Below are positions 1 through 60,993 of a stretch of DNA of 63,586 nt, in pieces (position 1 is the first letter of the stretch; every line of letters starts with the position of its first letter). Below the pieces are notes generated by a model. That model was not told the origin of the DNA, searched no databases, and saw only the letters and a list, made by a program, of their open reading frames with translations. Source of the DNA: Hydrolagus colliei (Eukaryota); assembly GCA_035084275.1 (NCBI GenBank), contig CM068771.1:5208415-5272000 (forward strand). The letters are read 5' to 3'. The position numbers and the translations under genes are program-made.

Positions 1-660
1 TTCACACACACACACTCACTCACACTCACACTCGCTATATACTCTCACACACTCACTCACACTCATTCTCATACACTACACTCTCACACACTCTCACACT
101 CACTCTCTCTACACTCTCTTTACACACACTCTCACACTATCTCTCTCTCTCTCTCTCTCCCTGACTTGCCTCTTGTGTTATTGCCATCAACAGTTGTGCG
201 TTTGTGACCTTCGAGAAGATGGAGTCAGCGGATCAGGCCATCACTGATGTACACACACCCTCACACACACCCCCAAACACACACACACACCCTCACACAC
301 ACACACACACACCCTCACACACACACTGTCACCCACACCCTCACACACACACTGTCACCCACACCCTCACACACATACATACCAACACACACACACACAC
401 ACACCCTCCCTCACAATACACACAGTACCATGCACACACTCTCTCCCTCCTTCCCCCCCCTCCCCCTCTCCCTCCCTCCCTCCCCCCCTCTCTCCCTCCC
501 TCCCCTCCCCCCCTCTCTCCCTCCCTCCCCCCCCTCTCTCCCTCCCTCCCCCCATCCCTCCCCCCCTCTCTCCCACCCTCCCCCCCTCTCTCCCTCCCTC
601 CCCCCCTCTCTCCTCCCTCTCCCCTCCCTCCCTCCCTCACTCTCTCTCTCTCTCTCTCTG
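1..660. repeat. (CA)n/(CT)n and C-rich low-complexity intronic sequence around the NELFE exons
   Basis: Visible dinucleotide and CCCT repeats; the H/T/P-rich ORFs here are artefacts. Confidence 0.9.
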
Positions 661-1398
661 CCCCACAGTTGAATGGTTCTCTGGTTGGGAGATTTACCTG
701 AAGGTGATGATCGCTCGGAAACAGTTGATGTTGGAAACGGCCACTGGGAAGTCTGTGTGGGGCTCCCTGGGTAAGTGAGAGAAAGAGAGAGGGGGGGGGG
801 GGGGGGGGGCGGAGAGAGGGCGTGTAAGGAGCAGGATTAGGCCATTCAGCCCCTCCAGCCTGTCCCACCATTCAATAGGATCGTGGCCGATCTTCTAATG
901 TCTGCCCGATTTAAACCCATTTAATCCTATTATCCACAACAAGCCCTGTAGCTCAGTGGTTAGAGCCACTCACTCACTCGCTCGCTTGCTCGCTCGCCTG
1001 ACAAGCGCGAACGACCTGGGTTCGAATCCAGGCAGGTCAGGTCGGGGCGAAACCTTTGGGCAGGTATCCTTACTCCACACACAGACACATAGACACACAC
1101 ACTCACATAGACACACTCTCACACACAGACACACACTCACAAACACACATACTCTCACACACGACACACATGCCTGATAATAATTAGTTCGGGAGGGAAC
1201 GAGTGAGTGAGTGAGTGAGTGAACGAGTGAGTGAGGGAACGAGTGAGTGAGTGAGGGAGGGAGGGAGGGAGGGAGGGAGGGAGGGAGCTGAACTTGACAA
1301 TGTTTTTTTTCCCATCTCCAGCCGTCCAGAACAGCGCCAAAGGCTCTCACCGTGACAAGAGAACACAAGTGGTCTATAACGAGGACTTCCTGGGGTGA
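194..1398 (+). CDS. NELFE: Negative elongation factor E (NELF-E/RDBP), last three coding exons (194-248, 669-770, 1322-1398); gene continues left of the window
   Basis: AG/GT-bounded exons translate to CAFVTFEKMESADQAITD | LNGSLVG(E)IYLKVMIARKQLMLETATGKSVWGSL | AVQNSAKGSHRDKRTQVVYNEDFLG*. This matches the RRM and C-terminus of human NELFE (CAFVTYEKMESADQAVAELNGTQV...ARKQPMLDAATGKSVWGSLAVQNSPKGCHRDKRTQIVY). One extra G is needed at about 687-690 to keep frame. Confidence 0.93.
943..1085 (+). mobile_element. tRNA-derived SINE head with an internal microsatellite expansion
   Basis: CCTGTAGCTCAGTGGTTAGAGC (A box) ... GGTTCGAATCCAGGCAGGTCAG (B box); the same head recurs many times in the window. 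Confidence 0.8.
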
Positions 1399-1752
1399 GG
1401 GGGGGTGAGGGTGGGGGTGGGTGAGGGAGGGGAGGTGTGGGGTGAGTGGGGTGGGAGGGGCTGGTTTGCCTCCAGACCCTAAGATCACGGTCCCTCGCGA
1501 CCAGCCTCACCCCCCTGACCCCCACAAACCATCCGCGTTCAATCATCGGGGAGGAAAATACCTTCTGTGCCTCTCGTCTCCCTCACACACACACACAGAC
1601 ACAAGCACACACACACACGCACAGACACACACACACACACACATAGACACACACAAATACACACACGCTTGGAAGCGTACACACGCGTGCCCACTTGCAT
1701 AAACACCCCCCCCACACACACACACACACAGAGAGTTTGTTGTAAATAAGCG

Positions 1753-1758
1753 AATAAA
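1753..1758 (+). terminator. Probable NELFE polyadenylation signal (AATAAA)
   Basis: AATAAA about 355 nt after the NELFE stop codon. Confidence 0.5.
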
Positions 1759-2360: not shown

Positions 2361-2728
2361 NNNNNNNNNNNNNNNNNNNNNNNNNNNNNNNNNNNNNNNN
2401 NNNNNNNNNNNNNNNNNNNNNNNNNNNNNNNNNNNNNNNNNNNNNNNNNNNNNNNNNNNNNNNNNNNNNNNNNNNNNNNNNNNNNNNNNNNNNNNNNNNN
2501 NNNNNNNNNNNNNNNNNNNNNNNNNNNNNNNNNNNNNNNNNNNNNNNNNNNNNNNNNNNNNNNNNNNNNNNNNNNNNNNNNNNNNNNNNNNNNNNNNNNN
2601 NNNNNNNNNNNNNNNNNNNNNNNNNNNNNNNNNNNNNNNNNNNNNNNNNNNNNNNNNNNNNNNNNNNNNNNNNNNNNNNNNNNNNNNNNNNNNNNNNNNN
2701 NNNNNNNNNNNNNNNNNNNNNNNNNNNN
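2361..2728. other. Assembly gap (368 N)
   Basis: Run of N. Confidence 1.
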
Positions 2729-2910
2729 GGAGACACACACAAAGACAGACACGGACACAGAGAGAGACACGGTGAGGGAAAGAGAGAGAGACACACACAG
2801 AGAGAGAGAGAGTCACAGAGACGCCCCCTCACCCTCTTGTCTTCATTGTGTCTGCAAACCTTCCTCTTCATCTGCGCCCAGTCACCTCCCCTCCTCTTCA
2901 TCAAGCTCTG

Positions 2911-5480: not shown

Positions 5481-6341
5481 ATGGCGGACGGTGACCTGCC
5501 TGTGGTTTCCGGGTGTCCGGGGCCGGAGCCCGACCCCTCTCTCTGGCTCAGTCCGGACGGCAGCTTCGTGAAGACGGTGCTGGAGCCGGGCAGGGGCCTG
5601 GACAAGCCCGGGGTGGGGAGTCGCTGCCGGGTGGAGGTGGAGTGGGAGGAGGGGGGCCCCGAGTGCGGGGAGCTGCCCCTGGCCGGGCCCGGGGAGCTGG
5701 TGTTGGGAGAGGCGGACACCGAGCCGGGGGAGCTGCTGGAGAGCTGCCTGGAGACTATGCTGCCGGGGGAGCGATGCCGGGCCAGGCTGGGGACCGGGGC
5801 CTGCGCCGGCCTGGCCTGCGGCCTGAGGCTCGAGGGCTTCGACCAGCCCGGGGGCAGCTGGCGCCTGAGCTCGGAGGAGAAGTGGGAGCTGGTGGGGAGG
5901 CACCGGGAGGCGGGGAACGAGCTGTACCGGGCCGGCCAGGCCCCCCGCGCCGCCCGGCGTTACGCCAAGGCCCTGCGGCTGCTGGTGACGTTGCGGGGGG
6001 AGCTGACGGCCGGGAGGGGGGAGAGCGAGTACCAGAGGGACAAGGCCAAGCTCCACGCCAACCTGGCCGCCGCTCAGATCAAGGCCGGCCAACACGCCAA
6101 CGCCGTGAGCAACTGCACCAAAGCCTTGGAGGCCGAGCCGGGCTCCGTCAAGTGCCTGTACCGCAGGGGCCTGGCCCTGTCCGCCCTGAGGAGGTTCGGC
6201 CCGGCCAGGGAGGACCTGAGGGAGGCGCTGAGGCTGGAGCCAGGGAACAGCGCCGTGAGGCGCGAACTCAGGGTCGTGAGGGAGAGGCTGCGGTTTGACC
6301 GGCACGAGGAGACCGGGGCCATGAGCAAACTCTTCGCCTGA
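5481..6341 (+). CDS. FKBPL: FK506-binding protein-like (degenerate FKBP domain plus three TPRs), single coding exon, 286 aa
   Basis: ATG at 5481 opens a GC-rich frame containing SPDGSFVKTVLEPGRGLDKPGVGSRCRV, GELLESCLETMLPGE, GNELYRAG, LHANLAAAQ, KCLYRRG and a terminal SKLFA*. All match the human FKBPL layout, which also has one coding exon. AATAAA at 6449-6454. Confidence 0.92.
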   Translation: MADGDLPVVSGCPGPEPDPSLWLSPDGSFVKTVLEPGRGLDKPGVGSRCRVEVEWEEGGPECGELPLAGPGELVLGEADTEPGELLESCLETMLPGERCRARLGTGACAGLACGLRLEGFDQPGGSWRLSSEEKWELVGRHREAGNELYRAGQAPRAARRYAKALRLLVTLRGELTAGRGESEYQRDKAKLHANLAAAQIKAGQHANAVSNCTKALEAEPGSVKCLYRRGLALSALRRFGPAREDLREALRLEPGNSAVRRELRVVRERLRFDRHEETGAMSKLFA

Positions 6342-8435: not shown

Positions 8436-8494
<59 letters not shown>

Positions 8495-9714: not shown

Positions 9715-12700
9715 TTATTTGGGAGTGATGGTGAGCCAGGTGTCCTGATCCCAGGTGTAAAAGAAGGGGTAGAGAGGCTCGGTGACGTCGGCGGTGAGGG
9801 TGAAGGTGTGGAGCAGAGAGACCGTGTCAACGCTGTAGAAGGAGATCTTGCGCTCATCATAATCAAGAAGAATCCCCACCTTGCAGGGAATTTGCTCCCT
9901 GATGTTCTCGTGTGGGGTGGTGTTGATCTCAAATCGGACACCAAGACGGAGGATAGTCCAAAAGCCATTGGTTGGTGTCAGGGCCACGAAAGCCTTGCGT
10001 TCCACAGATGCCCTGGCCACTCCAATGACCCACTGATTGTTCCCTTCCACGTTAACCTCCCAGTACCATTTTCCTGATGTGCAACCTACATCTCCTAACA
10101 CACATTCCCGACCAGTGAAACAGTCCTTGCTTGGATCGACCACCTTTCTCGTGGTTCTCTTTTTCACTCTCTTCCGATTTTCGCTCAACTCCAGTCTGGG
10201 ATCTGCCGTACCTTCATCCAGCGTCACATTGACTGGGATGGACACAGAGGGAACAGTTTGGTTAGTAGAGGGTGTCTGACCCACACGGGAACCACGTCAC
10301 TGTGATGGACCAGGTGCTGAGGAACCATGCTTAGAATTACGTAAGAACATAAGAATAAGGAGCAGGATTAGGCCATCCAGCCCCTCGAGCCTGTCCCGCC
10401 ATTCAATAAGATCATGGCTTATCTTCTAATCCAATTCCTGCCCCCACCCGCCTTATCCCCATCTCCCTTAATCCCTCTTATCCATAAGAAAACTTACCAA
10501 TTCTCACGCAATTTCTCTCCTCCTCAGCAGACAAGACACAAAAAACAAATGCTCATAAATTAAATACGGTAATATAAATTCGCCAAAAGCGAAACTTCTT
10601 ACCAAAATACTGGAGTAGGTTATCTCTTGCTGTAAAAAAGACAAAGAAATAATATTAAAGTCAGCGAATGCGTTCAGTTCTCCCTCGATTCAGGAAACGG
10701 CAGCAATTTCATTTTTATTGAAAGCGAACAATTTTTAGTTTCCGTATTTTAGGACCTGGAGAGGATGCAGAGAAGATTTATTGCCTCCTGTAGCTCAGTG
10801 GTTAGAGCACTCGTCTTACAAGTGTGAGACCTGTGTTCGAATCCAGGCAGGTCAGGGCGAAATCTTAGGCAAGTTTCCTTACTCCACAAACACACAGACA
10901 CGCCTAATAAAAACACTCTTGCCAAACAAAAACAAGAATAAATTGGTCATTTCAGCTCCAATCCTGCGTTCGAATCCAGGCAGGTCAGGGCGAAACCTTG
11001 GGCAAGTTTGCTTACTCCACACACACACACACACACACACGCGCGCCTAAAAAAAACCACAATAATAAAATTGTTCATTTGAATCCACGACTGTTTGTGG
11101 GGGACGCTGCTGTGCGCAATCGGCTGTGAAGCGCTTTGAGACGCCGATAAGATGTGAAAAGCGTTTATCAAATGCAAGGATTATTATGTATTATTATTCT
11201 TGTTGTGGAGTCCGTGGTGAGCAGAGCACCCCCGTCACAACCCATCAATCTACTAACCGCAGAGTTCCCACTTACTGCTGGTAAACAGATGGTTGAGGAG
11301 TTTGCGTAACCTACAAATCGATCCTGGATCCTCTCACTCGCGAGGCAAGCTTTCTAACCACTAACCGGTTTCTCTGTCTCTTACCTTCAGCTCTGAGAAT
11401 GCGCTGTACATCTGTAAAGAGAGGCACAAAATGGAATTAATTCACGGTACCTAGATAGTTAGATTCACAATACCCTCACATCTCAGAGCTTCACAACTCT
11501 TTGCTCTCACAAACATACTTATTATTATTATTATTATACAGACACTTATTCATATCTCCGAGCCATGACGTGGTTGTGATCAGGGCAGAGAACACACATA
11601 CATGAAATGAATTTACTGTAACAAAATATTGTACCTTGTTTCCCAAGTAGTTTCTCTCTCTCTGTAAAGAAAATACAGAGAAAATGTGTTTATCCGGTGA
11701 GTTTATGGAGAAAATTTCAGGTAGACCCCGATTAACGTCATAGTTTGGTCCTTGAAAAGAGCGACTTTAAGCGAAACGAGGTTAAGCGGATATGTTTTTC
11801 CCACAAAGAATGAATGTTAGGTTCTTTTGGACATTTTTCATCAAAATTTTCTTTAAAAAAACATATAATACTCACTCCCTGACAGAGTGGCTCACTCACT
11901 CAGGTCAGCCTAGAATGTGAGCTCAAAAAATCCCACACAATCGGAGCTTGAACCCCCATCGTTCGGACTCGGAGGCGAGAGAGTGACTGAGTCACAAGAT
12001 CAAACAAATTAACAGATGAAAATCCCAAATTCGAACCATTGAGATTAGATTTACCTGATTTTTCAGCTTTTAACTCTTTTCCTGAGGGGGAAAAAAACAC
12101 ACATAAATGAGGAAACTTACAAAGTTAGAATTATTCCTTAAATAGAGCGAATTTCACAACTGGAGGATGTCTCAAAGGGTTTACCGCAAATTTAGAGGCT
12201 GTTCTGTAAGTGAATTGGGGTGCCAATTTCTACCATTTTGCCCACAAATATACAGTCACTTCGCTTTACAATATATTCTGTGAAGCGCTTTGAGACGTGG
12301 ATAAGATGTGAAGAGCGCGACATCAAATGCAAGGATTATTATTGTTACGGCACAATCACGCTCTCCTTATCGGCCTTCCCAACACTTCCCTCAACAACCT
12401 GCTGTTCTCCCTCACCAGGACCCCATCAGACCCCATCCTGTCTCGGCTCCAGGCCCCATCCCTCAGAGGATCCCAGTTCAAAGTTTTCATCCTCATCTTC
12501 ATTGACTTGCTCCCTCCTACGCGGGCGACCTACGAACCCCTTTATCTACCTGTCCGCTCCCTCTGCTGAGCAAGCTCCGTGTACGCCATCTGAGACACTG
12601 TACCTTTCCTTATTTGGTATCTTCTCACCCCGAGGATTGTCGCTACGACGGCGATGAGGACGAGAGCCGAGCAAACCCAGAATGCCACCATCCAGGGAGA

Positions 12701-14943
12701 GGCTCGGGGGAAGAATTCATCTGGGGGGAAAAAATACACAAGGTACAGGAAAACGCCACACAAAAAAACCTCAGCGTTTCAAAGTTCCTCAGCAGAGAGT
12801 TGGCAACTCTGAGATGATGAGACAACCGTAAGGGAACTCGTCCAAGGTTTCGTCCTGACTGGGAATCGAACCCAGGTCTGTGGCTTGTAAGGCGAGTGCT
12901 CTGACCACTGAGCTATGGGGCTCCATCCTCGTCCTCAAGCCATTGATGGGAGATGTCGAGGAGTGAGGTCGGAGCAGGGGCAAGGTAATGTGGACAATTC
13001 CCTCCCGACAATTCAAGATCCTCTCACTCATTTACAAATCCTTTCACGGTCTCCTGGTTGTCCCTAGTTCCCTCTATGTTTCCTTACTCCATAAGCCTAA
13101 CAGTAATCCATCCCTAAAAACACCCACAATGATAAACATTGGTCATTTTAATCCACGACTGTTTGTTGGGGGGACGCCGCTGTGCGCAATTGGCTGCCGC
13201 GTTTCGCCCACAAATACACAGTCAATTCACTTCACAGTACATTCTGTGAAGCGCTTTGAGACGTCGATAAGATGTGAAAAGCCACTATATCAAATACAAG
13301 GATTATTATATTATTACACCGTCAGTGGCCACACTTTCAGCCACTACTTCCCAAATCACTGTCGCTCTCTCCTTGATACCCTCCGCCTTGCCCAATCCCT
13401 CCCTTCACCCTTCGACTTCCTCCCTCTCTCTCTCAAGCTCCGCCACTGTCACTGCCCTAGTTGAGGGGCTGAATATACGTGTGTGTTGTGGTTGTACCTG
13501 CAATGCGGACGGTAATCTGAAGCTTGGATTTGAGCACAGGGTTCGTGATGAGACAGGAAAACTTGTTGGTCTGCCCTGAGGCCACCCTGACGCTGCTGTC
13601 TACTCTCCACAGGCCCCCAGGCTCCTCCAGCTGGTTCTCAGCCGCTCCCTCCAGGTCCTGACGGCTGCCATCCAGCCAGTTGACCTGGGGTTTGGGGTAC
13701 CAGCCCTGCGACCTGCACACCAGCCTCACCCGATCCTCGCTCACCCCTTCCAGGTCAATCCAGGGCTGGAGACCGGTCACTGTGGACAAACGTTACAACA
13801 AGAATGACACCCCCCTGGGGCTCTGTGCGCGGGAAGTGATGACGGCAGCCACTGTGCGCAGGAAGTGATGATGATGATGGTGGGAGGGCATGGCTCACTC
13901 ACAGGAAGGTCAAATCGCCTTTCCCAGGGCAAAGCACATGCACAGGAAGTGATGTCAGCAGGATAACGAAGTTCCCACACGCAGGAAGTGATGTCAGCCG
14001 GCCCCCGCAAATTGCCCCATGTTTTTGGATGCCCTGCTCACATACTCCGAGGGATGGAGTGGGGAGAGTGGAGGGGGTGGGGTGGGGGGAGGGGGGGGGG
14101 GTGAGTGTGGCGAGAATGGGGGAAGGCCTTAAACTATTGACGTGGAGAGAGAGGGGAATGGAAATCACCTACTTGTAACTTCCAGGTCGATCACCGCCTC
14201 GTCATCTTCGGTGGAGGAGCTGACAAAACACTTGTATTTTCCTTCGTCTGAAATCGTGACGGAGCGAAGACGGAGAGAGACGTTGCCAGCGGCGATTTGC
14301 TCAGGGAACAGCCTGGCCCGGCCCTGGTAGCCGGAGCCCAGGTCATCCCCGCGAGGGTCCACCTCCCGGTGCTGATAGATCAGGTTCATCCACAAGGACT
14401 TGAACCACCGCACCTCCATATTCACTGGTTTCCCCGGGGTTATCCAACACGGCAACGTGACGTCCTTCCCAACCACGGCAATAACCGACTGCTTTGGTCC
14501 ATTCACAGTGAAGCCAGCTGTGAAGAAAATAATCATATTAATGCGGTCACTCAACCCAGTTAAAGATCTCCCACGGAGCCAATAATCCATCCCAAAAAAA
14601 ACCAACAACGGCAAAAAAAATTGGTCATTTCAACCCACTGTTGGCTGTTTGTGGGGGACGCTGCTGTGCGCAATTAGCTCACACAAAGCTAATTGCGCAA
14701 TTCACCCACAAATGTACAGTCAATTCACTTTACAGTATATTCTGTGAAGCGCTTTGAGACATCGATGAGATGTGAAAAGCGCTATATCAAATTTATAAAT
14801 TTATTCTTCACTCCAGTAGCAAATTTATAAAGTAGCACATATCTCAGTAACAGGAGGTACAATTCAATACAGAAAAAGTACTCACCAGAGACTGAGAGAT
14901 GAATCACCAACAGGATGGCCTCAACTGAACGTCTCAGGTCCAT
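9715..14943 (-). CDS. Butyrophilin-like receptor BTN-A (signal peptide, IgV, IgC, TM, three 27-nt stalk exons, B30.2), intact, 466 aa
   Basis: Exons 14886-14943 (58 nt, MDLRRSVEAILLVIHLSVS), 14173-14517 (345, IgV LPCW...WF...DEGKYKC), 13498-13779 (282, IgC), 12604-12720 (117, TM), 12055-12081, 11385-11411 and 10603-10629 (27 each), 9715-10232 (B30.2 with WYWEV and LDYD). All have GT/AG ends and phase 1. Total 1401 nt, open frame. Confidence 0.92.
10787..11200 (+). mobile_element. DeuSINE-like element (tRNA-like head, partly duplicated; Deu core; 3' tail)
   Basis: Head TAGCTCAGTGGTTAGAGC..GTTCGAATCC, core TGTTTGTGGGGGACGCTGCTGTGCGCAATCGGCTG, tail GAAGCGCTTTGAGAC..TGTGAAAAGCG..ATCAAATGCAAGGATTATTA. 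Further copies near 13130, 14620, 15140, 20130, 36510, 37855, 43185, 44800(-), 52190(-) and 55790. Confidence 0.8.
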
Positions 14944-23035: not shown

Positions 23036-23360
23036 TAGGGTCCGGAAATATATCGATATATCGCTAAAACCCGACATAATTTTCATATCGGTACTCATTT
23101 AAAAATATCGATATATCGAAAAAGTCGATATATTGAAAAAATGGGGATGTGTGCACACTGAACTACAAGACGCAGAATGCTCATCTCTATACACAATGCA
23201 CAGACCGAGGTTACTGTTGAGTGTATTATTAATATGGTGTATTATTAATATGGTATGTTTTAAAATAAGCTAATTTTTTGTGTCGGATTTTCGGCAACTT
23301 GCCGTCCGATTATCCGGCACAGTCAATTAGTCGACCCCTTGGAGGGTGCCGGATGAACAG
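23036..23360. mobile_element. Probable DNA-transposon (hAT-like and Tc1/pogo-like) non-autonomous remnants
   Basis: TAGGG start with repeated ATATCGATATATCG sub-terminal motifs; the right end reads TACGGTAAAAGCCTGTTCATCCGG on the minus strand. Absent from the paralogous BTN-A intron. Confidence 0.45.
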
Positions 23361-40104: not shown

Positions 40105-40679
40105 CTACACCAACAACAATGATGAATACTCACCTTTCAACAAATTTATCCATTTTGAATCGGTCTCAATAGGAGCGATGGTGAGCCAGTTATCATCCAA
40201 GGTAAAAAAGAAGGGGTAGAGAGGCTCTTTGATATCAGTGGTGAGGGCAAAGGTGTGGAGCAGAGAGACCGTGTCAACACTGTAGAAGGAGATCTTGCGC
40301 TCATCATAATTAAGAAGAATCCCCATCTTGCAGGGAATTTGCTCCCTGATGTTCTTGTGTGGGGTGGTGTTGATCTCAAATCGGATAGCGAGACGAAAGA
40401 TGGACCAAACGCCATTGGTTGGTGTCAGGGCCACGAAAGTCTTGCGTTCCACAGACGCCCTGGCCACTCCAATGGCCCAATGATTGTTCCCTTCCACATC
40501 CACCTCCCAGTACCATTTTCCTGATGTGCAACCTACATCTCCTAACACACATTCCCGACCAGTGAACCTGACGTTGCTCAAATTGAACTCTTTTGCTACG
40601 CTTCCCCTTTTCACTCCCTTTCGATTTTTGCTCACCGTCAGTCTGGGATGTGCTGTATCTTCATCCAGTGTCACGTTAA
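40105..40679 (-). CDS. Butyrophilin-type terminal B30.2 exon (BTN-C); upstream exons not present in the sequenced window
   Basis: Phase-1 acceptor paralogous to BTN-A/B; open frame VNVTLDEDTAHP...GKWYWEV...LNYDERKISFY...LLLV*. Its downstream flank resembles the BTN-A and BTN-B flanks. Confidence 0.8.
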
Positions 40680-41720
40680 CTGGGGTGGACACAGAGGGAA
40701 TGTTTTAGTTAGGAGAAGATCACAGGGTATCTGTCCAATGTGTAATCACATCACTGTGATCAGCCGAGTGACTGACACATGCGTAATCCTGTCACCATGA
40801 TCAGCTGGGTGTCTGACACACACATGGAAACCCATCACTGTGATCAGCCAGGTGTCTGACACATGGAAGTCATGCTTGGAATTCTCATACAATTTCTCTA
40901 CTGGTCAGAAGATCAGAGGCAAAAACAAATATTCAACAAAGAAAATAATACAAAATCCTCCTTCAGGCCTAAAATCTGCCAGAGAAACATTGTTATTTTC
41001 AAGGTTTAGGAAATGGCTGACAGTGGTGTGAACAGGCAGTGATGCCAATGGAAGAGGGATGATTGTTCATGTTGGACAACATAGTAGTTCTCTGCAATAC
41101 TTGTTATATGCTGTCATATGCAATTTGCTGAAACCCTGGTCCAGGCCTTTGTCACCTCTCACTGGACTATTGCAACGCCCTCCTTGCCGGTCTCGCCTCC
41201 ACCACAATCCACAAAATCCATCTGATTCAAAACTCTACCGCCCGTGTTCTCACCCGCACCAAACTTCGCTCCCCCATTACCCCAATCATTTCCAGACTTC
41301 ACTGGCTCCCTGTCCCTGAGAGGATCGACTTCAAGATTCTCACCCTTGCTTTCATATCCCTCCACTCCTTTGCACCGCCCTACCTCTCTGATCTCCTCTC
41401 TCCCCAAACCAGCACCCACTGCCTTCGCTCCACCGGTTCTGGCCTCCTCCAGGTCCCCTACTTCCTCCTCTCCAGTCTCGGCACCGTGCCTTCAGCCACT
41501 ATGCCCTGAGGCTCTGGAATCCCTTCCTCACTCCCTTCGTCTCGCCCCGTCTCTTCCCAGTTTCAGATCATAGCTAAAGACCTTTCTCTTTGACCTTGCC
41601 TTGGTCACCTTTCTACCCCTGCCCCTGGCTCAGTCCCGGAATCCATTACTGTGAAGTGCTCTGAGACCCCATCGAGCATGGAGAGCTCTATATAAATCAA
41701 AGTTGTTGTTGGTGTTGTTA

Positions 41721-41920
41721 NNNNNNNNNNNNNNNNNNNNNNNNNNNNNNNNNNNNNNNNNNNNNNNNNNNNNNNNNNNNNNNNNNNNNNNNNNNNNNNN
41801 NNNNNNNNNNNNNNNNNNNNNNNNNNNNNNNNNNNNNNNNNNNNNNNNNNNNNNNNNNNNNNNNNNNNNNNNNNNNNNNNNNNNNNNNNNNNNNNNNNNN
41901 NNNNNNNNNNNNNNNNNNNN
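41721..41920. other. Assembly gap (200 N)
   Basis: Run of N cutting through PRRT1 exon 2. Confidence 1.
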
Positions 41921-44900
41921 TGGCCGTTGAACTGCGTCTCCTGGATGTAGCTGCCGTCCGCGCCGAGCGTCACGGCCGAGGGGTGGGGTGGGGGGCCGTA
42001 CACACCCGGGGGCCCGTGGCTCGAGCCGTCCTGGACAGGGTTGTAGGGCGGGGGGAGACATCATCTGGTGGTGCCCTCCATCCTGCAGGGCTGGGGTGGG
42101 GGGGGGCGGGGGGGGGGAGAACAAGACATGGGGGACAAGGATAGGGGGGGGGGGGGAGGAGACAGAGGTGGTTTTATTTGGGTCAGTGTCTGACACATAA
42201 CAACAACAACAACAAATTGATATTTATACAGCGCCCTTCACGTCAGGACTAGAGTGGAGGGGGGGGGGGGGGGGGGGGGGGGGAGGGAGGGAGGGGGGGT
42301 GGTTCGGAGTAAGGGGAAGGAGAGTAGGAAAGAGAGGGCGGGGGGGGGGTGTGTGGGGGGGTTAGGAGGGCAGCAGAAGGCGCGGTCGAAGAGGAAGGTC
42401 TTGAGACCGGCCTTGAAGGAGGAAAGGGAGGAGGCGAGGGCGGAGGGGCTAGCGGGATGGAGTTCCAGAGTGAGGGGGTGGGGGGTGGGGGGGGCAGAGA
42501 GGCTGGAAGCCCGGCCACCGATGGTAGGGCAGGTCGTGCGGGGGACATGGAGCAGGCCCGAGGCTGCTGAACGCAGGGGACGGGGGAGGCTGACAGGGAG
42601 ACAGCAGGTCGGAGAGATAGGCGTGGGTTTATTAAAGGTTTTTGCGTTGGACTGGAGTAAGGAAACTTGGTCCCAAGGTTTCGCCCTGACCTGCCCGGAT
42701 TCGAGCACAGGTATCAACGCGTGACTGTAAAGCCTGTGACTCTAACCCACTGGGCGACACGAGCTCCACGTTGGAATAACGTGATAATAAGAATCCTTGC
42801 GGTTTGATATCGCGCTTTTCACGTCTTCTAGACTGTGTCTCAACCCCCCCCTCCCCCAACCCCACACTCTCTCTCTCTCTCTCTCTCTAACCCACCCTCC
42901 CACTCACTATTCCCCTCGCCAACCCCCCTCCCCCCCACTCTCCCTCTCCTCCATCCCTCCTCTCTCTCTCTCTCTCTCTCTCTCGCTGCTCTCTGTGTTA
43001 AGACTCTCACTCCCCGCTGAGCTGAGCTGAGAGCTGACAGTGTAATGTGCACCTTTAGGTGAACGCTAATTAAGGGGACATCAGCTGATCCCTTCCTCCC
43101 ATTCTCAGCCTCAGCCCATTTAATTCTTCTTCATTGCATGAATTTCCTCTCTCTCTCTCTCTCTGCTGTCTCTCCCCCTTTTATTCCTGTAGCTCAATGG
43201 GTTAGAGCCACTCGCCTTTACAAGCGAGAGACCTGTGTTCGAATCCAGGCAGGTCAGGGCGAAACCATGGGCAAGTTTCCTTACTCCACACACACACACA
43301 CACACACACATACCCACACACAGGCCTGATAATAAACCCTCCCCCAAAAAACACACAATAATACAATAAAAATTGGTCATTTTCAACCCACGGCTGTTTG
43401 TGTGGGGAGACGCTGCTGTGCGCAATTGGCTGCCGCGTTTTGCCCACAAATATACATACAGTCACTTCACTTTACAGTACATTCTGTGAAGCGCTTTGAG
43501 ACGTCGATAAGATGTGAAAAGCTCTCTAACAAATGCAAGGATTATTCTTACTATCCTCCACTCTCATCTCTCTCCATCCTTCGCGCGCGCTCTCTCTCTC
43601 TCTCTCCCTCCATCTTTCACTCTCTTCCCCTATCTCTCTCCATCTCTCTCTCTCTCTCTCTTTCTCTGTGAGCGAAACGGCTCCCGCACTCGCTTACACA
43701 GCGCACAGTCACTACACTTGGCCCCAAGAGAGAGAGAAAGAGAGAGAGCTGACTCGAACAGAAAAAGAGGACGCAGAGAGACAGAGAGAGAGAGACGGAG
43801 ATGGGGGGGCCATAAAAAAAAGAGAGGAGGGAGAGTGATCGAGAGAGGGAAAGAGCATGAGAGAGGGATAGAACCAGCGTGGGGAGGGGGGCATAGGGGC
43901 GAAAGAGAGAGAGAGAGAGAGAGCGGAAGAGACAGTCACTATAAATAAACCGGGGGACTGTTATTTTCCGAGAGATTGAGAATGGATATGAAAGTGGGAC
44001 AGAAAGTGGGGGAGGAGGGAATGGGAATAGGCAGAGCTGGGCTCCACCCGCCCCCTCCTTCTCCTCCCCCCTCCCATTCCCACCGGGGGATCTATTCACA
44101 CGTCAACCCGGCCTTGATTTGCAACAGCCTCGCACAGCAGCGCCACGTGTCAACCAATCGAGAGACGCTCTCCCAACTCCGAGGGAAAAGACAACAGAGA
44201 AACCTCAGCCGAGCTCCCGCCTCCGAGTCCAAAGATGCGAATAATAATACTAATAATGTATTGCGTTTCACATCGAGCTTTATTAGCCCTCTGGCCTGCT
44301 CCATGTCCCCCCCGCACAACCATCTCTGCTCCCACAGTCCCTTCGCCTCGCTCCCTCCCTCCCTCCCTCTCCTCCTTCAAGGCCGGCCTCAAGACCTTCC
44401 TCTTCGACCGAGCCTTCTGCTGCCCCCCCACCCCCCCAACTCTCTCCCTCCCCTCCTAACTCTCTCCCGCCATTCCCCCCCTGGCCTGCCCCTCTCCCCG
44501 CTCCAGTTCCCGTCGTGACCGTTCAGCACCTCGGGACGTCCTCCTGACGCGAGAGCCAGGAGAGTGAAACTCCCTTCTCTTGTCGAATCGCACGGCGAGA
44601 GATTTTTTAACACCTGAACTCCCGAACGGGGCGCAGACTGGGGAACGAGTTTAACATCTCATCCAAAGGAAGGCATCTCTGATAAAGTAGCACAACCAAC
44701 ACCCCCCCCACCCACCACCCACACCCAGCTCCACATCGGAGCGTCAACTTCGACTGTGACTCCACGCCTACCTTGCGTGCCGTGAATTTTGAGAGCGAAA
44801 TAATAATAATCCTTGCATTTTGATAAGGCGCCTTTCGCGTCTGCTAGACGTCCCAAAGCGCCTCACAGCATACACTGTAAAGTGAAGTGACTGTATATAT

Positions 44901-53587: not shown

Positions 53588-53779
53588 NNNNNNNNNNNNN
53601 NNNNNNNNNNNNNNNNNNNNNNNNNNNNNNNNNNNNNNNNNNNNNNNNNNNNNNNNNNNNNNNNNNNNNNNNNNNNNNNNNNNNNNNNNNNNNNNNNNNN
53701 NNNNNNNNNNNNNNNNNNNNNNNNNNNNNNNNNNNNNNNNNNNNNNNNNNNNNNNNNNNNNNNNNNNNNNNNNNNNNNN
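53588..53779. other. Assembly gap (192 N)
   Basis: Run of N. Confidence 1.
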
Positions 53780-56986: not shown

Positions 56987-57414
56987 TGGCAGGGCTGCAG
57001 TGACACTGGTGCTCAGCCTCCTGGAGTCCTAGTGTGCATTTTGCAGTGTGTGTGTCTGTGTGTGTACGCTGCACTGCTGTACTGTAGTACACGCGCTTGC
57101 ATGGGAGCTCCAAAGAGAGTAATACAAGGTAAGCTTAACCAGTGCTCTGCACTAAATCTTTCTTTTAGGGGGCCCAGCTGGACCCTCAGATTTTTTCAAG
57201 GCATCCAAGTGTGTTGCAGATCATAACTTTTTTTTTGCGTGCCCAATGCTAAAATTAAGGTGTCCAGGGTGCCTGTTAATGTCGAGCCCTGGCTTAACTA
57301 TTGGCTGATACTGAAGTGATAGAAGCAAAAACAAAATCCTTCCTGAAAATGTAACAACTTCCTGAAAAATTACTACAACCTTCCTGAAAATCTTCCTTGA
57401 AGGTTGGCAGATCT

Positions 57415-57888
57415 TTAGTGGCTCAGAGTTTTCCCTATTAGCATTGGAACCGGGTAGAATAAAGGGTAAAGTTTCTCAGTGAAAGTATGGTTGAAAGTAT
57501 GGAGATGAGACATGTTATCAGCATTGTAATATAACACCTGTCCCCCTTCATAGTCCAGGTAAACTCCAACCTTCCTGGGTCTCGCTGTCAGGGACAGGCT
57601 GGTGAGAGGTGACATCAGTGCCCAATAGACCCCGCCCTCCAGCCCCACACACCAGACCCCACCATTTGATGTCGATGTGATTGGTTGTTTCCTGTTGACA
57701 GACTCTCGGACCAATCCTAAACTCCACTCAATCTTGTTTCCCACCTGCACCTCCCAGTAATGTCTCCCTGATGTAAAGCCCTCAGATCCCAAGACAATGG
57801 GATGGTAACTAAACCTCTTTGGGGTGTCAGGGAGCGGCTGCCATCTGTCTCCGAGTCTCACTCTGGTCAGGGCCTTAGACAGGACGAG
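57415..57888 (-). pseudogene. 5'-truncated, 3'-frameshifted duplicate of the TRIM PRY/SPRY exon
   Basis: Begins at LVLS with no acceptor or LDP motif, abutting an L2 tail fragment. Continues [31 protein letters not shown]...LDYEGG. The C-terminus is shifted ([13 protein letters not shown]) relative to its paralogs. Confidence 0.85.
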
Positions 57889-58085
57889 CTATATAAATCG
57901 AAGTTGTTGTTGAATGAGGGTGGATTGAGTGCAATATTTTAGTGTGTGAAAGATAGAAAGCTCCCAACTATAATCCCTTGCACCCCGTCCTGTATTACTA
58001 TAAATAACAACAGCAACAAAATTATATTTGTGTAGCACCTTGAATCACGTGGAAACTGGGGTAAGTCTACATTATTGTTGATGAG

Positions 58086-60993
58086 TTATAACCGGCAGCT
58101 TTTCAGTGCTTCAGAGTTTTGCTTGTCACCATTCAACCCGGTATAGAAGAAGGGATAAAGTTTCTCAGTGAAAGTGTGAGTGAAAGTGTGGAGATGAGAC
58201 ATGTTATCAGAGTTGTAAAATGACACCTGTCCCCCCTCATAGTCCAGGTAAACTCCAACCTTCCCGGGTCTCACTGTCAGGGACAGGGGGGTGGGGGGTG
58301 ACATCAAAGCCCAATAGGCCCCATCCACCAGCCAAACACCCCAGATTCCACCAGTTGGTGTCAATGTGATCTCTCCTTTCCTGTTGACAGATTCTCTGAC
58401 TAACCCCACACTCCACTCAGTCTTGTTCCCCACCTGCACCTCCCAGTAATGTCTCCCTGATGTGAAGCCCTCAGATCCCAGGACAATGGGATGGTAACTA
58501 AACCTCTTTGGGGTGTCAGGGAGCGGCTGCCGTTTGTTTCCGTATCTCACACTGGTCAGGTCCTCAGACAGGATGAGCTGGGGATGGGCTGTGTCAGGAT
58601 CCAGGGTCAGAGAGGCCGGAGCTGAGAGAGAGAGAAATAACACACAGTGTAGTGAGGGGGTCACAGAGCAGTGGGGGGGGAGGGGGGGGGCTGCAGGAGC
58701 GAGGGCGGGGCACTAGGGGGCGGTGTGTGAGCTGGTGAAGGGTTAGTTGCTGAATACAGGACAAACAGCACTGATCGTGTACCGGCAGCAGAGGGCGCTA
58801 GGGACAGGGTGACTGGAGTCCCTGTCGGTGTAAACGCTCACACAGCGCCACCTGATCACCCACGGCCATAATTTGGTACTACAAGAGTAAAGAGCCCTGG
58901 GCTGTTTCCCTGCAGAATTATTTAACAACACTGGAGTTCTGTTTTGTAGTGGTTAGCACTCGCCTCGCAAGTGAGAGGAATCAGTTTTGATTCCCAGTGT
59001 GGGCGAAACCTTATGCAAGTTTCCCTACCCCGCACTCCTCTGCGTTAGCAGTAATTAGCAATCTGGTTGATGGAGCACATTTTTGAGCCTAATAAACCCT
59101 TCAAAATTTTTGAAAAATAATGAATTAGGTTAATACATGACTACAGGATACTACTGTACAGTTTATTGTGTGAAGAGCTTTGACGTGTTGTGAATATGTG
59201 ACAATGCGAAATATCAAATGACAGGATTATTATTAATTTGTTAGGATTCAGGTGAATATAAAACTATTCACACACCTTCAGTCTGAGAATGGGAGACATT
59301 TACCTGTGGTGAGGCTGGGTAGCATCTCTCTCCAAGCTGCGTACTGTACAGGCCCTTTGTATTTCCCCATAGGCAGATCACCCTCAAATACTGACAGCTC
59401 AAAATCCCCATCACTGACCCTGGAATAAGTGACGTTCACATTAGAAAGTGAAACTACACCTTATGTTCATTTGCAAATTAAATTTTAGGAATATTTGGTA
59501 ATGAACATTTCATACCTTCCCTTTCGAGCAGGTTCCTCCTAGTGAAATTAAACACAGACAGATCTGAGACATGACATTGTAAACTTAGATACGGACAATA
59601 GAATTCTACAGCAATAACAACAACAAGAATACATTTGTGTGGCGCCTTTCACATTGGCAGGACCTTCAAAGACGCTAGGGAGTCAGTCTTCCAGAATTGA
59701 GCTGGGGATCGGAATCAGGGAGGGGCAGGAGTGTAGGTGAGGGGGTCGGATGTGGTCAAAGAGGAGGGTCTTGAGATGGGGATAAGAAGGAGGGACTGGG
59801 ATAGAGAGTGGTTGAGATGGGGGATGTGAAATAGGCTGGAGCCTGCTGAAACCTTACAAAGAAAAATCTTATTATACCAGATAGTATAACTACTAGTCTG
59901 TTTCACCGTGAAACTTTCATTTTCTGCTACAGACTGTGTGGCATTTACTGAACTGAATTGTTTACCTGCAGAAATATGAGTGCATTCATCTCTTTACCTG
60001 CAGAAAGGTGAACGCATCTTTTTCCATCTCTTCCCGTAACTCTGAGAGTTTGTTTTGAACAGAAGCTAAATTGCTCTGAATCTTTTGTAGATTTTTCTCC
60101 ATTTCCTGTAAAATTTTCCCCTCTTGCTTTCTGAGCGCTCGGATTACTCGCTGCTCTCTGTCATGAAGGCTCTGGTGCATTTTGGCAAACTCAGCCGTGA
60201 GATGCTTCTCCAAATTCCTCACCTGTTCCTATAAAATGAAGTATCACAACAGGTACTTATATAAAGAGGAACACGATTGAGGTCCCAGACATTACACAGT
60301 AATTAATCAAGGAAACACTAATAATAATACTATTATTATTAAATACAACTGATAATTATCACAACTTACTTTTAGTGCTGAAATCTTCTCTTTTTGCTTT
60401 GATTCTGCCTGTAGAACAGCATCCTTTCTCTTTGTAACCGGATCAACGGACAATTTCAGTTTTTCCTGCAACCAGAATATAGATTAACCAAAACAATTCC
60501 ATATTTAAATACCTCACATCAACAACTATGATAGAGAGAGAGATCGAGAAATAGTCACGTTATAAAGTTTGCTTGTTGATACCTTGTGGATCTTAGCCGC
60601 TTTCCCTATCATCTTTACGTCGTGGAGTTTGTGTTCATCAAGATCAACAAGACACATGACACAGATCAATTCTGTATCAGTTTCACAGAACAGCGTCAGT
60701 TCTTCCGAATGTTTATCACAGTTCCGTGCCTTTCTCTGCATAGATTTCAGGTTCAGATCCTTAGCTTTATCTGCCAGTTTCCCCAGCGTTCGATTTGGTT
60801 TCAAGTTACCACTTGGATTGACATCTCGACATTCTGGACAAGATTTTTGCAGCTGACCTTCCCAGTTCCGTGTGATACAAGAGCAACAGAAGTTGTGGCC
60901 ACACTTCAGGGTAACCGGCATGCTGAAGATCTCTAAACAAATAGAGCATTTTAACTCCTCTGTCCAGCTCTGCTCTAGGTGTCTCAGAGCCAT
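58086..60993 (-). CDS. TRIM-B: RING, B-box2, coiled coil, PRY/SPRY, intact, 470 aa
   Basis: Exons 60583-60993 (411), 60370-60465 (96), 59998-60228 (231), 59516-59538 (23), 59304-59419 (116), 58086-58621 (536). Total 1413 nt, open frame, same architecture as TRIM-A. Confidence 0.93.

What the first reader, a model, noticed from the sequence alone, without database searches (positions are those of the whole stretch)
194..60993. Butyrophilin + TRIM B30.2 array embedded among MHC class III framework genes (NELFE, FKBPL, PRRT1) in a probable cartilaginous fish
Seen: the order is NELFE(+), FKBPL(+), BTN-A(-), TRIM-A(-), BTN-B(-), H2B pseudogene, BTN-C exon(-), PRRT1(-), TRIM B30.2 pseudo-exon, TRIM-B(-). 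Known: human NELFE, FKBPL and PRRT1 are class III genes with FKBPL next to PRRT1. BTN genes lie in the extended class I region (BTNL2 at the class II/III border), and TRIM-B30.2 genes lie in class I. BTN/BTNL proteins select and activate gamma-delta T cells. Inference: two B30.2 lineages that are separated in mammals alternate here inside the FKBPL-PRRT1 interval. This could be a candidate MHC-linked butyrophilin system in a lineage with gamma-delta TCRs, and it bears on primordial-MHC models.
Basis: partly seen in the sequence, partly recalled or inferred. Interest (0 to 1): 0.85.

Follow-up and report, generated by a model that had tools for sequence, protein, structure and literature searches.

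The report
Butyrophilin–TRIM gene cluster beside FKBPL
In a chimaera (ratfish-type cartilaginous fish), butyrophilin and TRIM immune genes lie interleaved next to the MHC class III genes NELFE and FKBPL; the cluster is real, but the same layout is already annotated in a sawfish, so this is a useful extra data point and not a discovery.

Summary
They are the NELFE 3' exons, an intact FKBPL, and three butyrophilin (BTN) units. BTN-A is intact, with 9 exons and 475 aa. BTN-B has all 9 exons but one in-frame TAG. BTN-C is a truncated last-exon copy. There are also two intact 6-exon TRIM genes (469 and 470 aa), a truncated TRIM B30.2 copy and an H2B relic. "PRRT1" is not confirmed. It is a 46-codon proline-rich reading frame that abuts the 200-N gap, has no in-frame ATG, has no CD225 exons in the window, and found no PRRT1 relative in an exhaustive search. 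The window is four contigs joined by gaps. Only FKBPL, BTN-A, TRIM-A, BTN-B and BTN-C share one gap-free 39-kb contig. FKBPL is 82% identical, and TRIM-A 79%, to the Callorhinchus milii proteins, so the source is a holocephalan other than C. milii. The B30.2 exons form two deep lineages. B30.2 trees conflict with domain architecture, which suggests exon exchange between BTN and TRIM genes. Interleaved BTN and "A33-like" TRIM arrays among class III genes are already annotated in sawfish (Veríssimo 2023, supplement). BTN–MHC linkage in cartilaginous fish was published in 2026. Verdict: a new member of a known kind, of modest interest.

The parts
194..1398 (+). NELFE, last three exons (194-248, 669-770, 1322-1398 including the stop). 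The gene's 5' part lies outside the window.
   Evidence: Splice sites were read directly. The C-terminal 50 aa match PDB NELF-E residues 325-371, E=8e-17. Exon 669-770 is 102 nt where the flanking phases require 103. LNGSLVGRF and LKVMIARKQ are in different frames, near position 695 beside a short C run.
2361..2728 (.). Assembly gap 1, between the NELFE 3' end and FKBPL.
   Evidence: Both flanks are low-complexity or tandem repeat and no exon touches the gap. The NELFE-FKBPL adjacency is known only from scaffolding.
5481..6341 (+). FKBPL, intact single-exon gene, 286 aa.
   Evidence: Pfam TPR_1/TPR_2 and FKBP_N_2. It is 82% identical to Callorhinchus milii FKBPL, 96% to an unnamed Logan contig protein, and 42-44% to shark and ray FKBPL.
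9715..14943 (-). BTN-A, intact butyrophilin gene, 475 aa. Exons: leader 14943-14886, IgV 14517-14173, IgC 13779-13498, TM 12720-12604, four 27-nt exons (12081-12055, 11661-11635, 11411-11385, 10629-10603), B30.2 10232-9715.
   Evidence: Pfam V-set, C2-set_3 (the BTN3A2-like IgC family), PRY and SPRY. All junctions are AG/GT and phase 1, and the frame is open. The best PDB matches per Ig unit are BTN1A1 (123 bits), BTN3A2 and BTN2A1 (112 bits). Database hits are named butyrophilin.
16696..20892 (-). TRIM-A, intact RING/B-box/coiled-coil/PRY-SPRY gene, 469 aa. Exons: 20892-20485, 19573-19478, 19388-19158, 18383-18361, 18262-18147, 17231-16696.
   Evidence: Pfam RING, B-box, PRY and SPRY. Gene model. 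It is 79% identical to C. milii 'zinc-binding protein A33-like' and 60-65% to many shark paralogues.
22361..28577 (-). BTN-B, a paralogue of BTN-A with all nine exons and conserved splice sites, but an in-frame TAG at 26647-26649 (where BTN-A has Trp) in the IgC exon. It is a probable young pseudogene, a null allele or a base error.
   Evidence: Exon-by-exon blastn to BTN-A, 74-93% nt identity. Boundaries and translation.
29420..35018 (.). Minisatellite, 18-bp unit x about 317 copies, separating BTN-B from the H2B relic.
   Evidence: Tandem Repeats Finder score 7640, 87% matches.
37209..37447 (-). Histone H2B relic (frame-disrupted pseudogene).
   Evidence: One piece matches PDB H2B chains at E=2e-12 to 7e-5.
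39662..40736 (-). BTN-C, a truncated duplicate of a BTN 3' end. It holds an open B30.2 exon (40679-40105) with a conserved acceptor, plus about 450 bp of 3' flank. No upstream BTN exons are present.
   Evidence: Pfam PRY and SPRY. The exon is 87% nt identical to the BTN-A exon. Homology to BTN-A (9223-10269) and BTN-B (21928-22994) stops at 40716/40736, and a SINE follows at 41128.
41721..41920 (.). Assembly gap 2 (exactly 200 N), the join on which the 'FKBPL-PRRT1 interval' depends.
   Evidence: The left contig ends in a SINE tail and a (GTT)n run. The right contig starts inside a GC-rich open frame. PRRT1's conserved exons are absent on both sides.
41923..42060 (-). PRRT1-like fragment: a 46-codon Pro-rich open frame running into gap 2. 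Identity unproven.
   Evidence: Translation. It has no in-frame ATG. Exhaustive phmmer gave no PRRT1 relative.
53588..53779 (.). Assembly gap 3, in repeat-rich intergenic DNA.
   Evidence: The flanks are a SINE and a (CA/TA)-type microsatellite, with no exon nearby.
57406..57890 (-). TRIM B30.2 exon copy truncated at its 5' end (no acceptor, first 14 or so codons missing), just downstream of TRIM-B.
   Evidence: 85% nt identity to the TRIM-B last exon and 84% to the TRIM-A last exon. Pfam SPRY plus a partial PRY.
58086..60993 (-). TRIM-B, intact six-exon TRIM gene, 470 aa. Exons: 60993-60583, 60465-60370, 60228-59998, 59538-59516, 59419-59304, 58621-58086.
   Evidence: Pfam RING, B-box, PRY and SPRY. 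Gene model. Its B30.2 is 77% identical to that of TRIM-A.

Best explanation
The window is a piece of the MHC class III region of a holocephalan (a chimaera other than Callorhinchus milii). Next to the framework genes NELFE and FKBPL lies a small birth-and-death cluster of two B30.2 gene families. One family is the butyrophilins (IgV-IgC-TM-coiled coil-B30.2). The other is a TRIM family that is greatly expanded in cartilaginous fish and is annotated as 'zinc-binding protein A33-like' or 'nuclear factor 7-like' (RING-B-box-coiled coil-PRY/SPRY).

Shown: the cluster grew by local duplication and is decaying. One BTN is intact, one is hit by a nonsense codon and one is a truncated copy. Two TRIM genes are intact and there is one truncated exon copy.

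Inferred from family knowledge: BTN-A is a surface B7-like immunoregulatory or ligand molecule, possibly for T cells including gamma-delta T cells. TRIM-A and TRIM-B are cytosolic RING E3 ligases that use the PRY/SPRY domain to bind targets, as TRIM proteins do in innate antiviral defence.

Inferred from trees: close juxtaposition of the two families lets B30.2 exons move between them.
For: - Gene models have canonical splice sites and open frames, and the Pfam domains fit.
- NELFE and FKBPL are identified by PDB and database matches.
- Holocephalan origin: FKBPL is 82% and TRIM-A 79% identical to the C. milii proteins, against 42-65% to elasmobranchs.
- FKBPL and all three BTN units plus TRIM-A lie on one gap-free contig, 2729-41720.
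- Paralogy: BTN B30.2 exons are 58-78% identical to each other and TRIM B30.2 exons 75-79%, but the two groups are only 34-43% identical to each other. Homology between copies extends into introns and flanks.
- B30.2 tree: the window BTN exons form a clade (100/100) inside a chondrichthyan BTN-type clade (100/100). The window TRIM exons group with C. milii TRIMs, sister to elasmobranch TRIMs that include the Mustelus neighbour of FKBPL.
- Synteny in Mustelus asterias: a TRIM lies 8.3 kb from FKBPL, and a BTN-like gene lies 2.9 Mb away on the same chromosome.
- Synteny in sawfish: the published chromosome 34 gene table shows BTN and A33-like TRIM genes interleaved with ATF6B, TNXB, PPT2, PRRT1 and NEU1. 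The sawfish TRIM P0036, which carries a BTN-type B30.2, maps into that class III array at 2.59 Mb.
- Exon exchange: holding the B30.2 domains of BTN-architecture proteins as one clade is rejected (AU p=7.5e-59 for all, 5e-4 within chondrichthyans). The Chiloscyllium BTN groups with other shark BTNs by ectodomain (99/97), but its B30.2 falls on the TRIM-type side.
Against: - No class I or class II gene is in the window, so 'MHC' rests on the two framework genes.
- NELFE, the PRRT1-like fragment and TRIM-B are each on other contigs joined only by N runs.
- PRRT1 is unverified.
- There are no expression data, so BTN-A could be silent.
- One-base frame offsets at homopolymer runs in NELFE and at the PRRT1-like start show that the assembly has indel errors. 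The BTN-B stop codon could likewise be an error, and 'intact' calls are provisional.
- The AU groupings were named after the tree had been seen.
- Incongruence in the B30.2 tree could partly reflect gene conversion, or paralogy that was not sampled, rather than exon shuffling.
Confidence: 0.8

Rival explanations
1. Scaffolding artefact. The order 'NELFE - FKBPL - array - PRRT1 - TRIM-B' was produced by joining four unrelated or misordered contigs, so the array is not truly embedded between class III framework genes.
For: Three N runs split the window. Both sides of the 200-N gap lack the PRRT1 CD225 exons, and the side holding BTN-C lacks upstream BTN exons. The contig ends lie in a SINE with a microsatellite and in GC-rich sequence, which are typical break points. 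Homopolymer frame offsets show imperfect assembly.
Against: The core adjacency of FKBPL, BTN-A, TRIM-A, BTN-B and BTN-C is gap-free. FKBPL-TRIM adjacency is seen independently in Mustelus. Sawfish has TRIM arrays directly flanking PRRT1, and BTN arrays flanking ATF6B and TNXB, so the scaffolded order is what synteny predicts. BTN-C's homology break lies about 1 kb before the gap, so its truncation does not come from the gap.
Confidence: 0.15
2. A functional, dedicated MHC-linked butyrophilin system that selects gamma-delta T cells. Several BTN proteins would act as heteromeric ligands for gamma-delta TCRs, as BTN3A1/BTN2A1 or BTNL3/BTNL8 do in mammals.
For: BTN-A has the complete BTN architecture and a BTN-like IgV-IgC ectodomain. 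BTN-A and BTN-B are a divergent pair (66% ectodomain identity), as heteromer partners often are. From general knowledge, cartilaginous fish have gamma-delta TCRs.
Against: Only BTN-A is intact in this assembly. The basic phosphoantigen-pocket residues of BTN3A1 are replaced in BTN-A (reference sequence from memory). There is no expression, binding or polymorphism evidence. A 2026 phylogenomic study argues that butyrophilins have ligands beyond gamma-delta TCRs (PMC12841164).
Confidence: 0.15
3. The Ig-B30.2 genes are not butyrophilins in the strict sense. They would be another B7-family lineage (CD276/B7-H3-like or ERMAP/MOG-like) that acquired a B30.2 exon independently from a neighbouring TRIM.
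For: The top PDB E-value goes to 4-Ig CD276 (7e-57, summed over two units), and single-unit CD276 scores 96-101 bits. The B30.2 phylogeny shows that exons have moved between TRIM and BTN genes. The chondrichthyan BTN-type B30.2 clade is separate from the B30.2 of bony-fish BTNs.
Against: Per IgV-IgC unit, BTN1A1 (123 bits) and BTN3A2/BTN2A1 (112 bits) outscore CD276. The IgC matches Pfam C2-set_3, the BTN3A2-like family, at 1.2e-21. All full-length database hits are annotated as butyrophilins. The ectodomain tree has the window pair, the elasmobranch BTNs and the ray-finned-fish BTNs as separate groups, as expected for a single old BTN lineage. That tree has no outgroup, so it cannot test this directly.
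Confidence: 0.1

Closest known systems
Sawfish (Pristis pectinata) chromosome 34 class III region, as annotated in RefSeq and tabulated in Veríssimo et al. 2023 (PMC10751288, supplementary file 1)
   Same: BTN-like genes and 'zinc-binding protein A33-like / nuclear factor 7-like' TRIM genes are interleaved with class III framework genes (NELFE, SLC44A4, ATF6B, CYP21A2, TNXB, PPT2, PRRT1, NEU1). A histone-like gene lies next to the BTNs. TRIMs carrying a BTN-type B30.2 lie in that array.
   Different: It is an elasmobranch, not a holocephalan, and is spread over about 2.5 Mb, whereas the window holds NELFE, FKBPL and 2 to 3 BTN/TRIM genes within 30 kb. FKBPL is not named in that table. In sawfish NELFE is next to SKIV2L and tapasin, while here its 3' end faces FKBPL 4 kb away (across a gap). 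The paper's main text does not discuss BTN or TRIM, and its paralogue table leaves the C. milii MHC column blank.
Mammalian butyrophilins (BTN1A1, BTN2A1, BTN3A1-3 in the extended class I region; BTNL2 at the class II/III border)
   Same: The domain order is the same: leader, IgV, IgC, TM, short repeated juxtamembrane exons, then a B30.2 last exon. The ectodomain and the B30.2 score best or near-best against these proteins. From general knowledge, human BTNL2 lies a few hundred kb from FKBPL and PRRT1.
   Different: Identity is only about 35-40%, and there is no one-to-one orthology. The juxtamembrane exons are 27 nt here. The BTN3A1 phosphoantigen-pocket residues are not conserved (reference from memory). 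The B30.2 lineage is specific to chondrichthyans and is shared with some TRIMs.
Chicken MHC-B TRIM-B30.2 cluster with the adjacent BG/BTN region (Ruby et al. 2005; review PMC8813856)
   Same: A TRIM-B30.2 multigene cluster and butyrophilin-family genes lie side by side next to the core MHC, with copy-number dynamics.
   Different: Chicken BG proteins have only an IgV and a long heptad tail, without B30.2. The chicken cluster lies outside the BF/BL region and is not mixed with class III framework genes.
Human class I-region TRIM cluster (TRIM10, 15, 26, 31, 39, 40, 27, 38)
   Same: These are class IV TRIMs (RING-B-box2-coiled coil-PRY/SPRY) linked to the MHC. Some elasmobranch relatives of TRIM-A among the top database hits are annotated TRIM39-like or TRIM21-like. 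The exon plan is the same: a large first exon, then 96-, 231-, 23- and 116-nt exons and a B30.2 last exon.
   Different: The window TRIMs belong to a chondrichthyan expansion (120 hits were listed out of 3,737 at E<=1e-40). No orthology to a specific human TRIM was shown.

Membership tests
Butyrophilin (BTN/BTNL) family | Extracellular IgV domain followed by a BTN-type IgC domain | tested here: met
   Pfam V-set 3e-10 and C2-set_3 ('BTN3A2-like Ig-C') 1.2e-21 for BTN-A. PDB hits: BTN1A1 123 bits, BTN3A2 112.7, BTN2A1 112, against single-unit CD276 at 96-101 and PD-L1 at 52.
Butyrophilin (BTN/BTNL) family | Single transmembrane segment followed by short repeated coiled-coil exons | tested here: met
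   The TM exon 12720-12604 encodes WMVAFWVCSALVLIAVVATILGV followed by RRYQIRK. Four 27-nt phase-1 exons follow. BTN-B has the same set.
Butyrophilin (BTN/BTNL) family | Cytoplasmic B30.2 (PRY/SPRY) domain encoded by the last exon of the same gene | tested here: met
   PRY and SPRY by Pfam. The phase-1 acceptor is compatible with the upstream exons and the joined frame is open for 475 aa. That all nine exons are spliced into one mRNA is inferred from phase and order, not from RNA.
Butyrophilin (BTN/BTNL) family | Ectodomain falls inside the BTN/BTNL clade of the B7 superfamily in a rooted tree | tested here: inconclusive
   The ectodomain tree used only fish BTNs, with no B7 outgroups. PDB bit scores favour BTN over CD276 by a modest margin.
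BTN3A1-type phosphoantigen sensor | Basic pocket in the B30.2 domain (His351, His378, Lys393, Arg412, Arg418, Arg469 of human BTN3A1) | tested here: not met
   BLASTP alignment gives H351->R, H378->V, K393->A, R412->E, R418->H and R469->Y in BTN-A.
Gamma-delta T-cell ligand or selecting element | Binds or selects a gamma-delta TCR, with epithelial or thymic expression | not testable with these tools
   No expression or binding data are available.
Class IV (C-IV) TRIM E3 ligases | RING, B-box2, coiled coil and C-terminal PRY/SPRY in one protein | tested here: met
   Pfam RING (zf-C3HC4_4, zf-RING_UBOX), zf-B_box, PRY and SPRY for TRIM-A and TRIM-B. Six-exon open models. Identity of 60-79% to annotated A33-like and NF7-like TRIMs.
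MHC class III framework segment | Presence of single-copy class III genes NELFE and FKBPL | tested here: met
   NELF-E match in PDB, E=8e-17. FKBPL orthologues found across vertebrates, E down to 1e-146.
MHC class III framework segment | PRRT1 as the distal anchor of the interval | tested here: inconclusive
   Only a 46-codon Pro-rich fragment is present. There is no CD225 domain and no significant homologue. One 9-residue motif matches. Synteny with sawfish makes PRRT1 plausible.
MHC class III framework segment | Physical linkage to class I, class II or C4 genes | not testable with these tools
   None of these genes is in the window, and the source chromosome is not available.

The most novel reading that the evidence does not exclude
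The chimaera locus may preserve a compact, near-primordial 'B30.2 block' of the MHC, in which butyrophilin and TRIM genes lie within a few kb of each other beside FKBPL and NELFE. On this reading, that juxtaposition is the substrate for repeated swapping of B30.2 exons between the two families. This would be the process that created butyrophilins, still active in cartilaginous fish. Current hints are sawfish and epaulette-shark TRIMs that carry a BTN-type B30.2, and a bamboo-shark BTN that carries a TRIM-type B30.2.
Probability: 0.25. Interest if true: 0.55.

Novelty: new member of a known kind. Interest (0 to 1): 0.3.

Why it matters
- The window adds the holocephalan branch, about 400 million years diverged from sharks and rays, to the evidence that butyrophilin and TRIM-B30.2 genes belonged to the class III part of the ancestral gnathostome MHC.
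- The main published survey leaves the C. milii MHC blank in its paralogue table. A compact chimaera contig carrying FKBPL, BTN and TRIM genes therefore fills a real, if small, gap.
- The conflict between the B30.2 trees and domain architecture gives a concrete case for studying how B30.2 exons move between neighbouring immune gene families.
- The window does not show function, and it does not change current primordial-MHC models.

Tried and rejected
1. PRRT1. A regex scan for the dispanin motif found nothing. The single exhaustive phmmer job returned two bacterial repeat proteins. PRRT1 therefore stays a weak lead.
2. Synteny walking with the look-up of encoding contigs. The 10-kb flanks around FKBPL are empty in Scyliorhinus and Stegostoma. 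Three proteins were not on record. The C. milii TRIM locus L006 showed no BTN exons. The Mustelus TRIM next to FKBPL matched none of the retrieved proteins exactly, so the walk stopped there.
3. tRNA genes, which would recall the human BTN/histone/tRNA neighbourhood. The four tRNA-like hits are heads of a SINE family with at least 10 copies in the window. Rejected.
4. Further genes in 6.4-9.7 kb, 35-40 kb, 42-57 kb and 61-63.6 kb. Six-frame segments show only SINE, LINE and low-complexity sequence.
5. First B30.2 tree. BTN-C had been translated out of frame. The tree was redone correctly.
6. BTN3A1-like phosphoantigen sensing by BTN-A. The pocket residues are not conserved.

Full report
**What the window is.** The window is 63,586 bp with 51% G+C and a CpG observed/expected ratio of 0.45. 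Three N runs, at 2361-2728, 41721-41920 and 53588-53779, split it into four contigs. It is vertebrate DNA, rich in SINE, LINE and low-complexity repeats.

**Species.** The FKBPL protein is 82% identical to Callorhinchus milii FKBPL, 96% to an unnamed protein from a Logan read assembly, and only 42-44% to shark and ray FKBPL. TRIM-A is 79% identical to its best C. milii relative and 60-65% to shark relatives. The source is therefore a holocephalan (chimaera) other than C. milii. "Probable cartilaginous fish" is correct and can be narrowed to that group.

- No gap lies inside a confirmed gene.
- Gap 1 lies in low-complexity DNA between the NELFE stop (1398) and the FKBPL start (5481).
- Gap 3 lies between a SINE and a microsatellite.
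- Gap 2 is exactly 200 N and is the critical one. The left contig ends in a SINE tail and a (GTT)n run. The right contig begins inside a GC-rich open frame, the "PRRT1" piece.
- Continuity and frame across the gaps cannot be established from the sequence. I did not look up the missing letters.
- The only gap-free statement is that FKBPL, BTN-A, TRIM-A, BTN-B, the H2B relic and BTN-C share contig 2729-41720. NELFE, the PRRT1-like piece and TRIM-B are linked to it only by scaffolding.

**NELFE and FKBPL.**
- NELFE (+): the last three exons are at 194-248, 669-770 and 1322-1398. The joined C-terminus matches PDB NELF-E residues 325-371 at E=8e-17.
- The middle NELFE exon is 102 nt where the flanking phases require 103. 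LNGSLVGRF and LKVMIARKQ are read in different frames. This is a one-base offset beside a short C run, most likely an assembly indel in an essential gene.
- FKBPL (+): 5481-6341, 286 aa, intact, with TPR and FKBP_N_2 domains.

**Butyrophilin units.**
- BTN-A (-) has nine exons (coordinates are listed in the parts section). All junctions are AG/GT and phase 1, and the joined frame gives 475 aa. The exons encode, in order:
  - the leader;
  - IgV;
  - IgC;
  - the TM segment;
  - four 27-nt exons, encoding GKELKAEKS, EREKLLGKQ, DVQRILRAE and ARDNLLQYF;
  - B30.2.
- BTN-B (-) has the same nine exons with conserved splice sites. It is 74-93% identical to BTN-A at the nucleotide level. It carries one in-frame TAG at 26647-26649, where BTN-A has Trp, in the IgC exon.
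- BTN-C is a truncated copy. It has an open B30.2 exon (40679-40105) with a conserved acceptor, plus about 450 bp of 3' flank. Homology to BTN-A and BTN-B stops 40-56 bp upstream of the exon, and no other BTN exon follows before the gap.

**TRIM units.**
- TRIM-A (-) has six exons of 408, 96, 231, 23, 116 and 536 nt, giving 469 aa.
- TRIM-B (-) has the same plan and gives 470 aa.
- A B30.2 copy truncated at its 5' end lies at 57406-57890.

**H2B relic.** A frame-disrupted H2B relic lies at 37209-37447.

**PRRT1.**
- Only 46 codons are present (41923-42060, -): CLPPPYNPVQDGSSHGPPGVYGPPPHPSAVTLGADGSYIQETQFNG. The frame runs into gap 2.
- The nearby ATGATG is one base out of frame, across a C6 run.
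- No CD225 exon or motif exists anywhere in the window.
- An exhaustive phmmer search of 1.84 billion representatives returned two bacterial repeat proteins and no PRRT1.
- PRRT1 is plausible from synteny, because sawfish PRRT1-like genes are flanked by the same TRIM family. It remains unproven.

**Family assignment.**
- Concatenated BTN-A exons retrieve proteins annotated as butyrophilins from sturgeon, sharks, a ray and catfish at 28-40% identity.
- Per IgV-IgC unit, the ectodomain scores highest against BTN1A1 (123 bits), BTN3A2 (112.7) and BTN2A1 (112). Single-unit CD276 scores 96-101, BTNL8 98.6, BTNL3 90 and PD-L1 52.
- The B30.2 scores about equally against BTN2A2, TRIM21 and BTN3A1, at 110-115 bits.
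- TRIM-A belongs to a very large chondrichthyan expansion. There were 3,737 hits at E<=1e-40, and the top ones are annotated "zinc-binding protein A33-like" or "nuclear factor 7-like". Many of them lie on the same chromosomes that carry FKBPL in Mustelus, Cetorhinus, Scyliorhinus, Heptranchias and Heterodontus.

**Two B30.2 lineages and exon exchange.**
- Within the window, BTN-type exons are 58-78% identical to each other and TRIM-type exons 75-79%. The two types are only 34-43% identical to each other.
- In a maximum-likelihood tree of 38 B30.2 domains, the window BTN exons form a clade (100/100). That clade lies inside an 11-member chondrichthyan clade (100/100). The larger clade also holds shark and ray BTNs, a Stegostoma ERMAP-like protein, and RING-containing TRIMs from sawfish and epaulette shark.
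- The window TRIM exons group with C. milii TRIMs. They are sister to elasmobranch TRIMs, including the Mustelus neighbour of FKBPL.
- Holding the six window exons as one clade is rejected (AU p=5e-7).
- Holding all BTN-architecture B30.2 domains as one clade is rejected (p=7.5e-59). For chondrichthyans alone the value is p=5e-4. These groups were named after the tree had been seen.
- By ectodomain, the Chiloscyllium BTN groups with Carcharodon and Mustelus BTNs (99/97). Its B30.2 falls on the TRIM-type side.
- Together these results point to movement of B30.2 exons between BTN and TRIM genes. The few-kb interleaving seen here would make such movement easy. This step is an inference.

**Synteny and prior knowledge.**
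- In Mustelus asterias, a RING-B-box-PRY-SPRY gene lies 8.3 kb from FKBPL on the opposite strand to it, the same relative orientation as in the window. Its B30.2 is 62-64% identical to TRIM-A and TRIM-B. A BTN-like gene lies 2.9 Mb away on the same chromosome.
- The supplement of Veríssimo et al. 2023 lists the gene order of sawfish chromosome 34. BTN-like and A33-like TRIM genes sit between the class III framework genes at these points:
  - NELFE - SKIV2L - C2/BF - ZBTB12 - EHMT2 - SLC44A4;
  - two A33-like TRIMs, then a BTN3A1-like gene;
  - ATF6B - OLFML2A;
  - three BTN-like genes;
  - a histone H3-like gene - LHX9 - CYP21A2 - TNXB;
  - a BTN-like gene, an A33-like TRIM, then a BTN-like gene;
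  - PPT2, followed by a carnitine O-acetyltransferase-like gene;
  - four TRIMs;
  - two PRRT1-like genes, then NEU1;
  - eight TRIMs;
  - LTA/TNF;
  - a further TRIM array.
- The sawfish TRIM with a BTN-type B30.2 (P0036) maps at 2.59 Mb inside that array.
- The paper's main text does not mention BTN or TRIM. Its table leaves the C. milii MHC column blank.
- A 2026 paper reports butyrophilins in all jawed vertebrates. It places them on the MHC class I chromosome in two sharks and a ray, and proposes an ancestral supracomplex.
- The chicken MHC-B TRIM-B30.2 and BG regions and the human class I TRIM cluster are long known.

**Verdict.** The "FKBPL-PRRT1 interval" is not demonstrated, and only one of the three BTN units is intact. 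The gamma-delta T-cell role is an extrapolation from family membership. The arrangement is already annotated in an elasmobranch. What is new is a compact holocephalan instance and a clear signal of B30.2 exchange between neighbouring BTN and TRIM genes. I rate it a new member of a known kind, interest 0.3.

Noticed in passing
window 29420-35018: A 5.6-kb minisatellite with an 18-bp unit (ACACAGCCCCTCCCCAAC), about 317 copies and 87% matches. It produces long spurious Cys/Gly/Val-rich ORFs on the minus strand, between BTN-B and the H2B relic.
   Followed up: partly
window about 690-700 (NELFE exon 669-770) and about 42040-42050 (PRRT1-like start): One-base reading-frame offsets next to short C runs, in an essential gene and at a candidate start codon. 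These suggest homopolymer indel errors in the assembly, which makes the BTN-B stop codon and all 'intact' calls provisional.
   Followed up: partly
window 10787-10851, 12858-12916, 20128-20199, 55786-55858 and at least 6 further copies: tRNA-like hits (Rfam 34-46 bits; ARAGORN tRNA-Val) are the heads of a tRNA-derived SINE family scattered through introns and intergenic DNA. They are not tRNA genes.
   Followed up: yes
window 27697-28203 (+), 36217-36477 (-), 61765-62441 (+): Fragments of a LINE reverse-transcriptase C-terminal region (motif ...[30 protein letters not shown]...). Pfam gave no family for the two fragments tested. The first lies in intron 1 of BTN-B.
   Followed up: no
window 6617-6910: A 39/79/118-bp A/T-rich tandem repeat immediately downstream of FKBPL. 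It gives overlapping ORFs on both strands that are not genes.
   Followed up: no
BTN-A 12081-10603 and BTN-B 24586-23405: The juxtamembrane region is encoded by four separate 27-nt, phase-1 exons (9 residues each). From memory, chicken BG and mammalian BTN genes use 21-nt heptad exons here.
   Followed up: partly
L004 19264-20945 (Mustelus asterias OZ172897.1, about 6.47 Mb): A TRIM gene lies 8.3 kb from FKBPL on the opposite strand. Its B30.2 branches at the base of the elasmobranch TRIM clade, so it is a candidate positional orthologue of TRIM-A.
   Followed up: partly
P0023 (Chiloscyllium plagiosum BTN1A1-like); P0036, P0037 (Pristis TRIMs); P0039 (Hemiscyllium TRIM): Domain-swapped relatives. 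One shark BTN has a TRIM-type B30.2 with a ...[11 protein letters not shown] tail like that of TRIM-A and TRIM-B. Several TRIMs have a BTN-type B30.2.
   Followed up: partly
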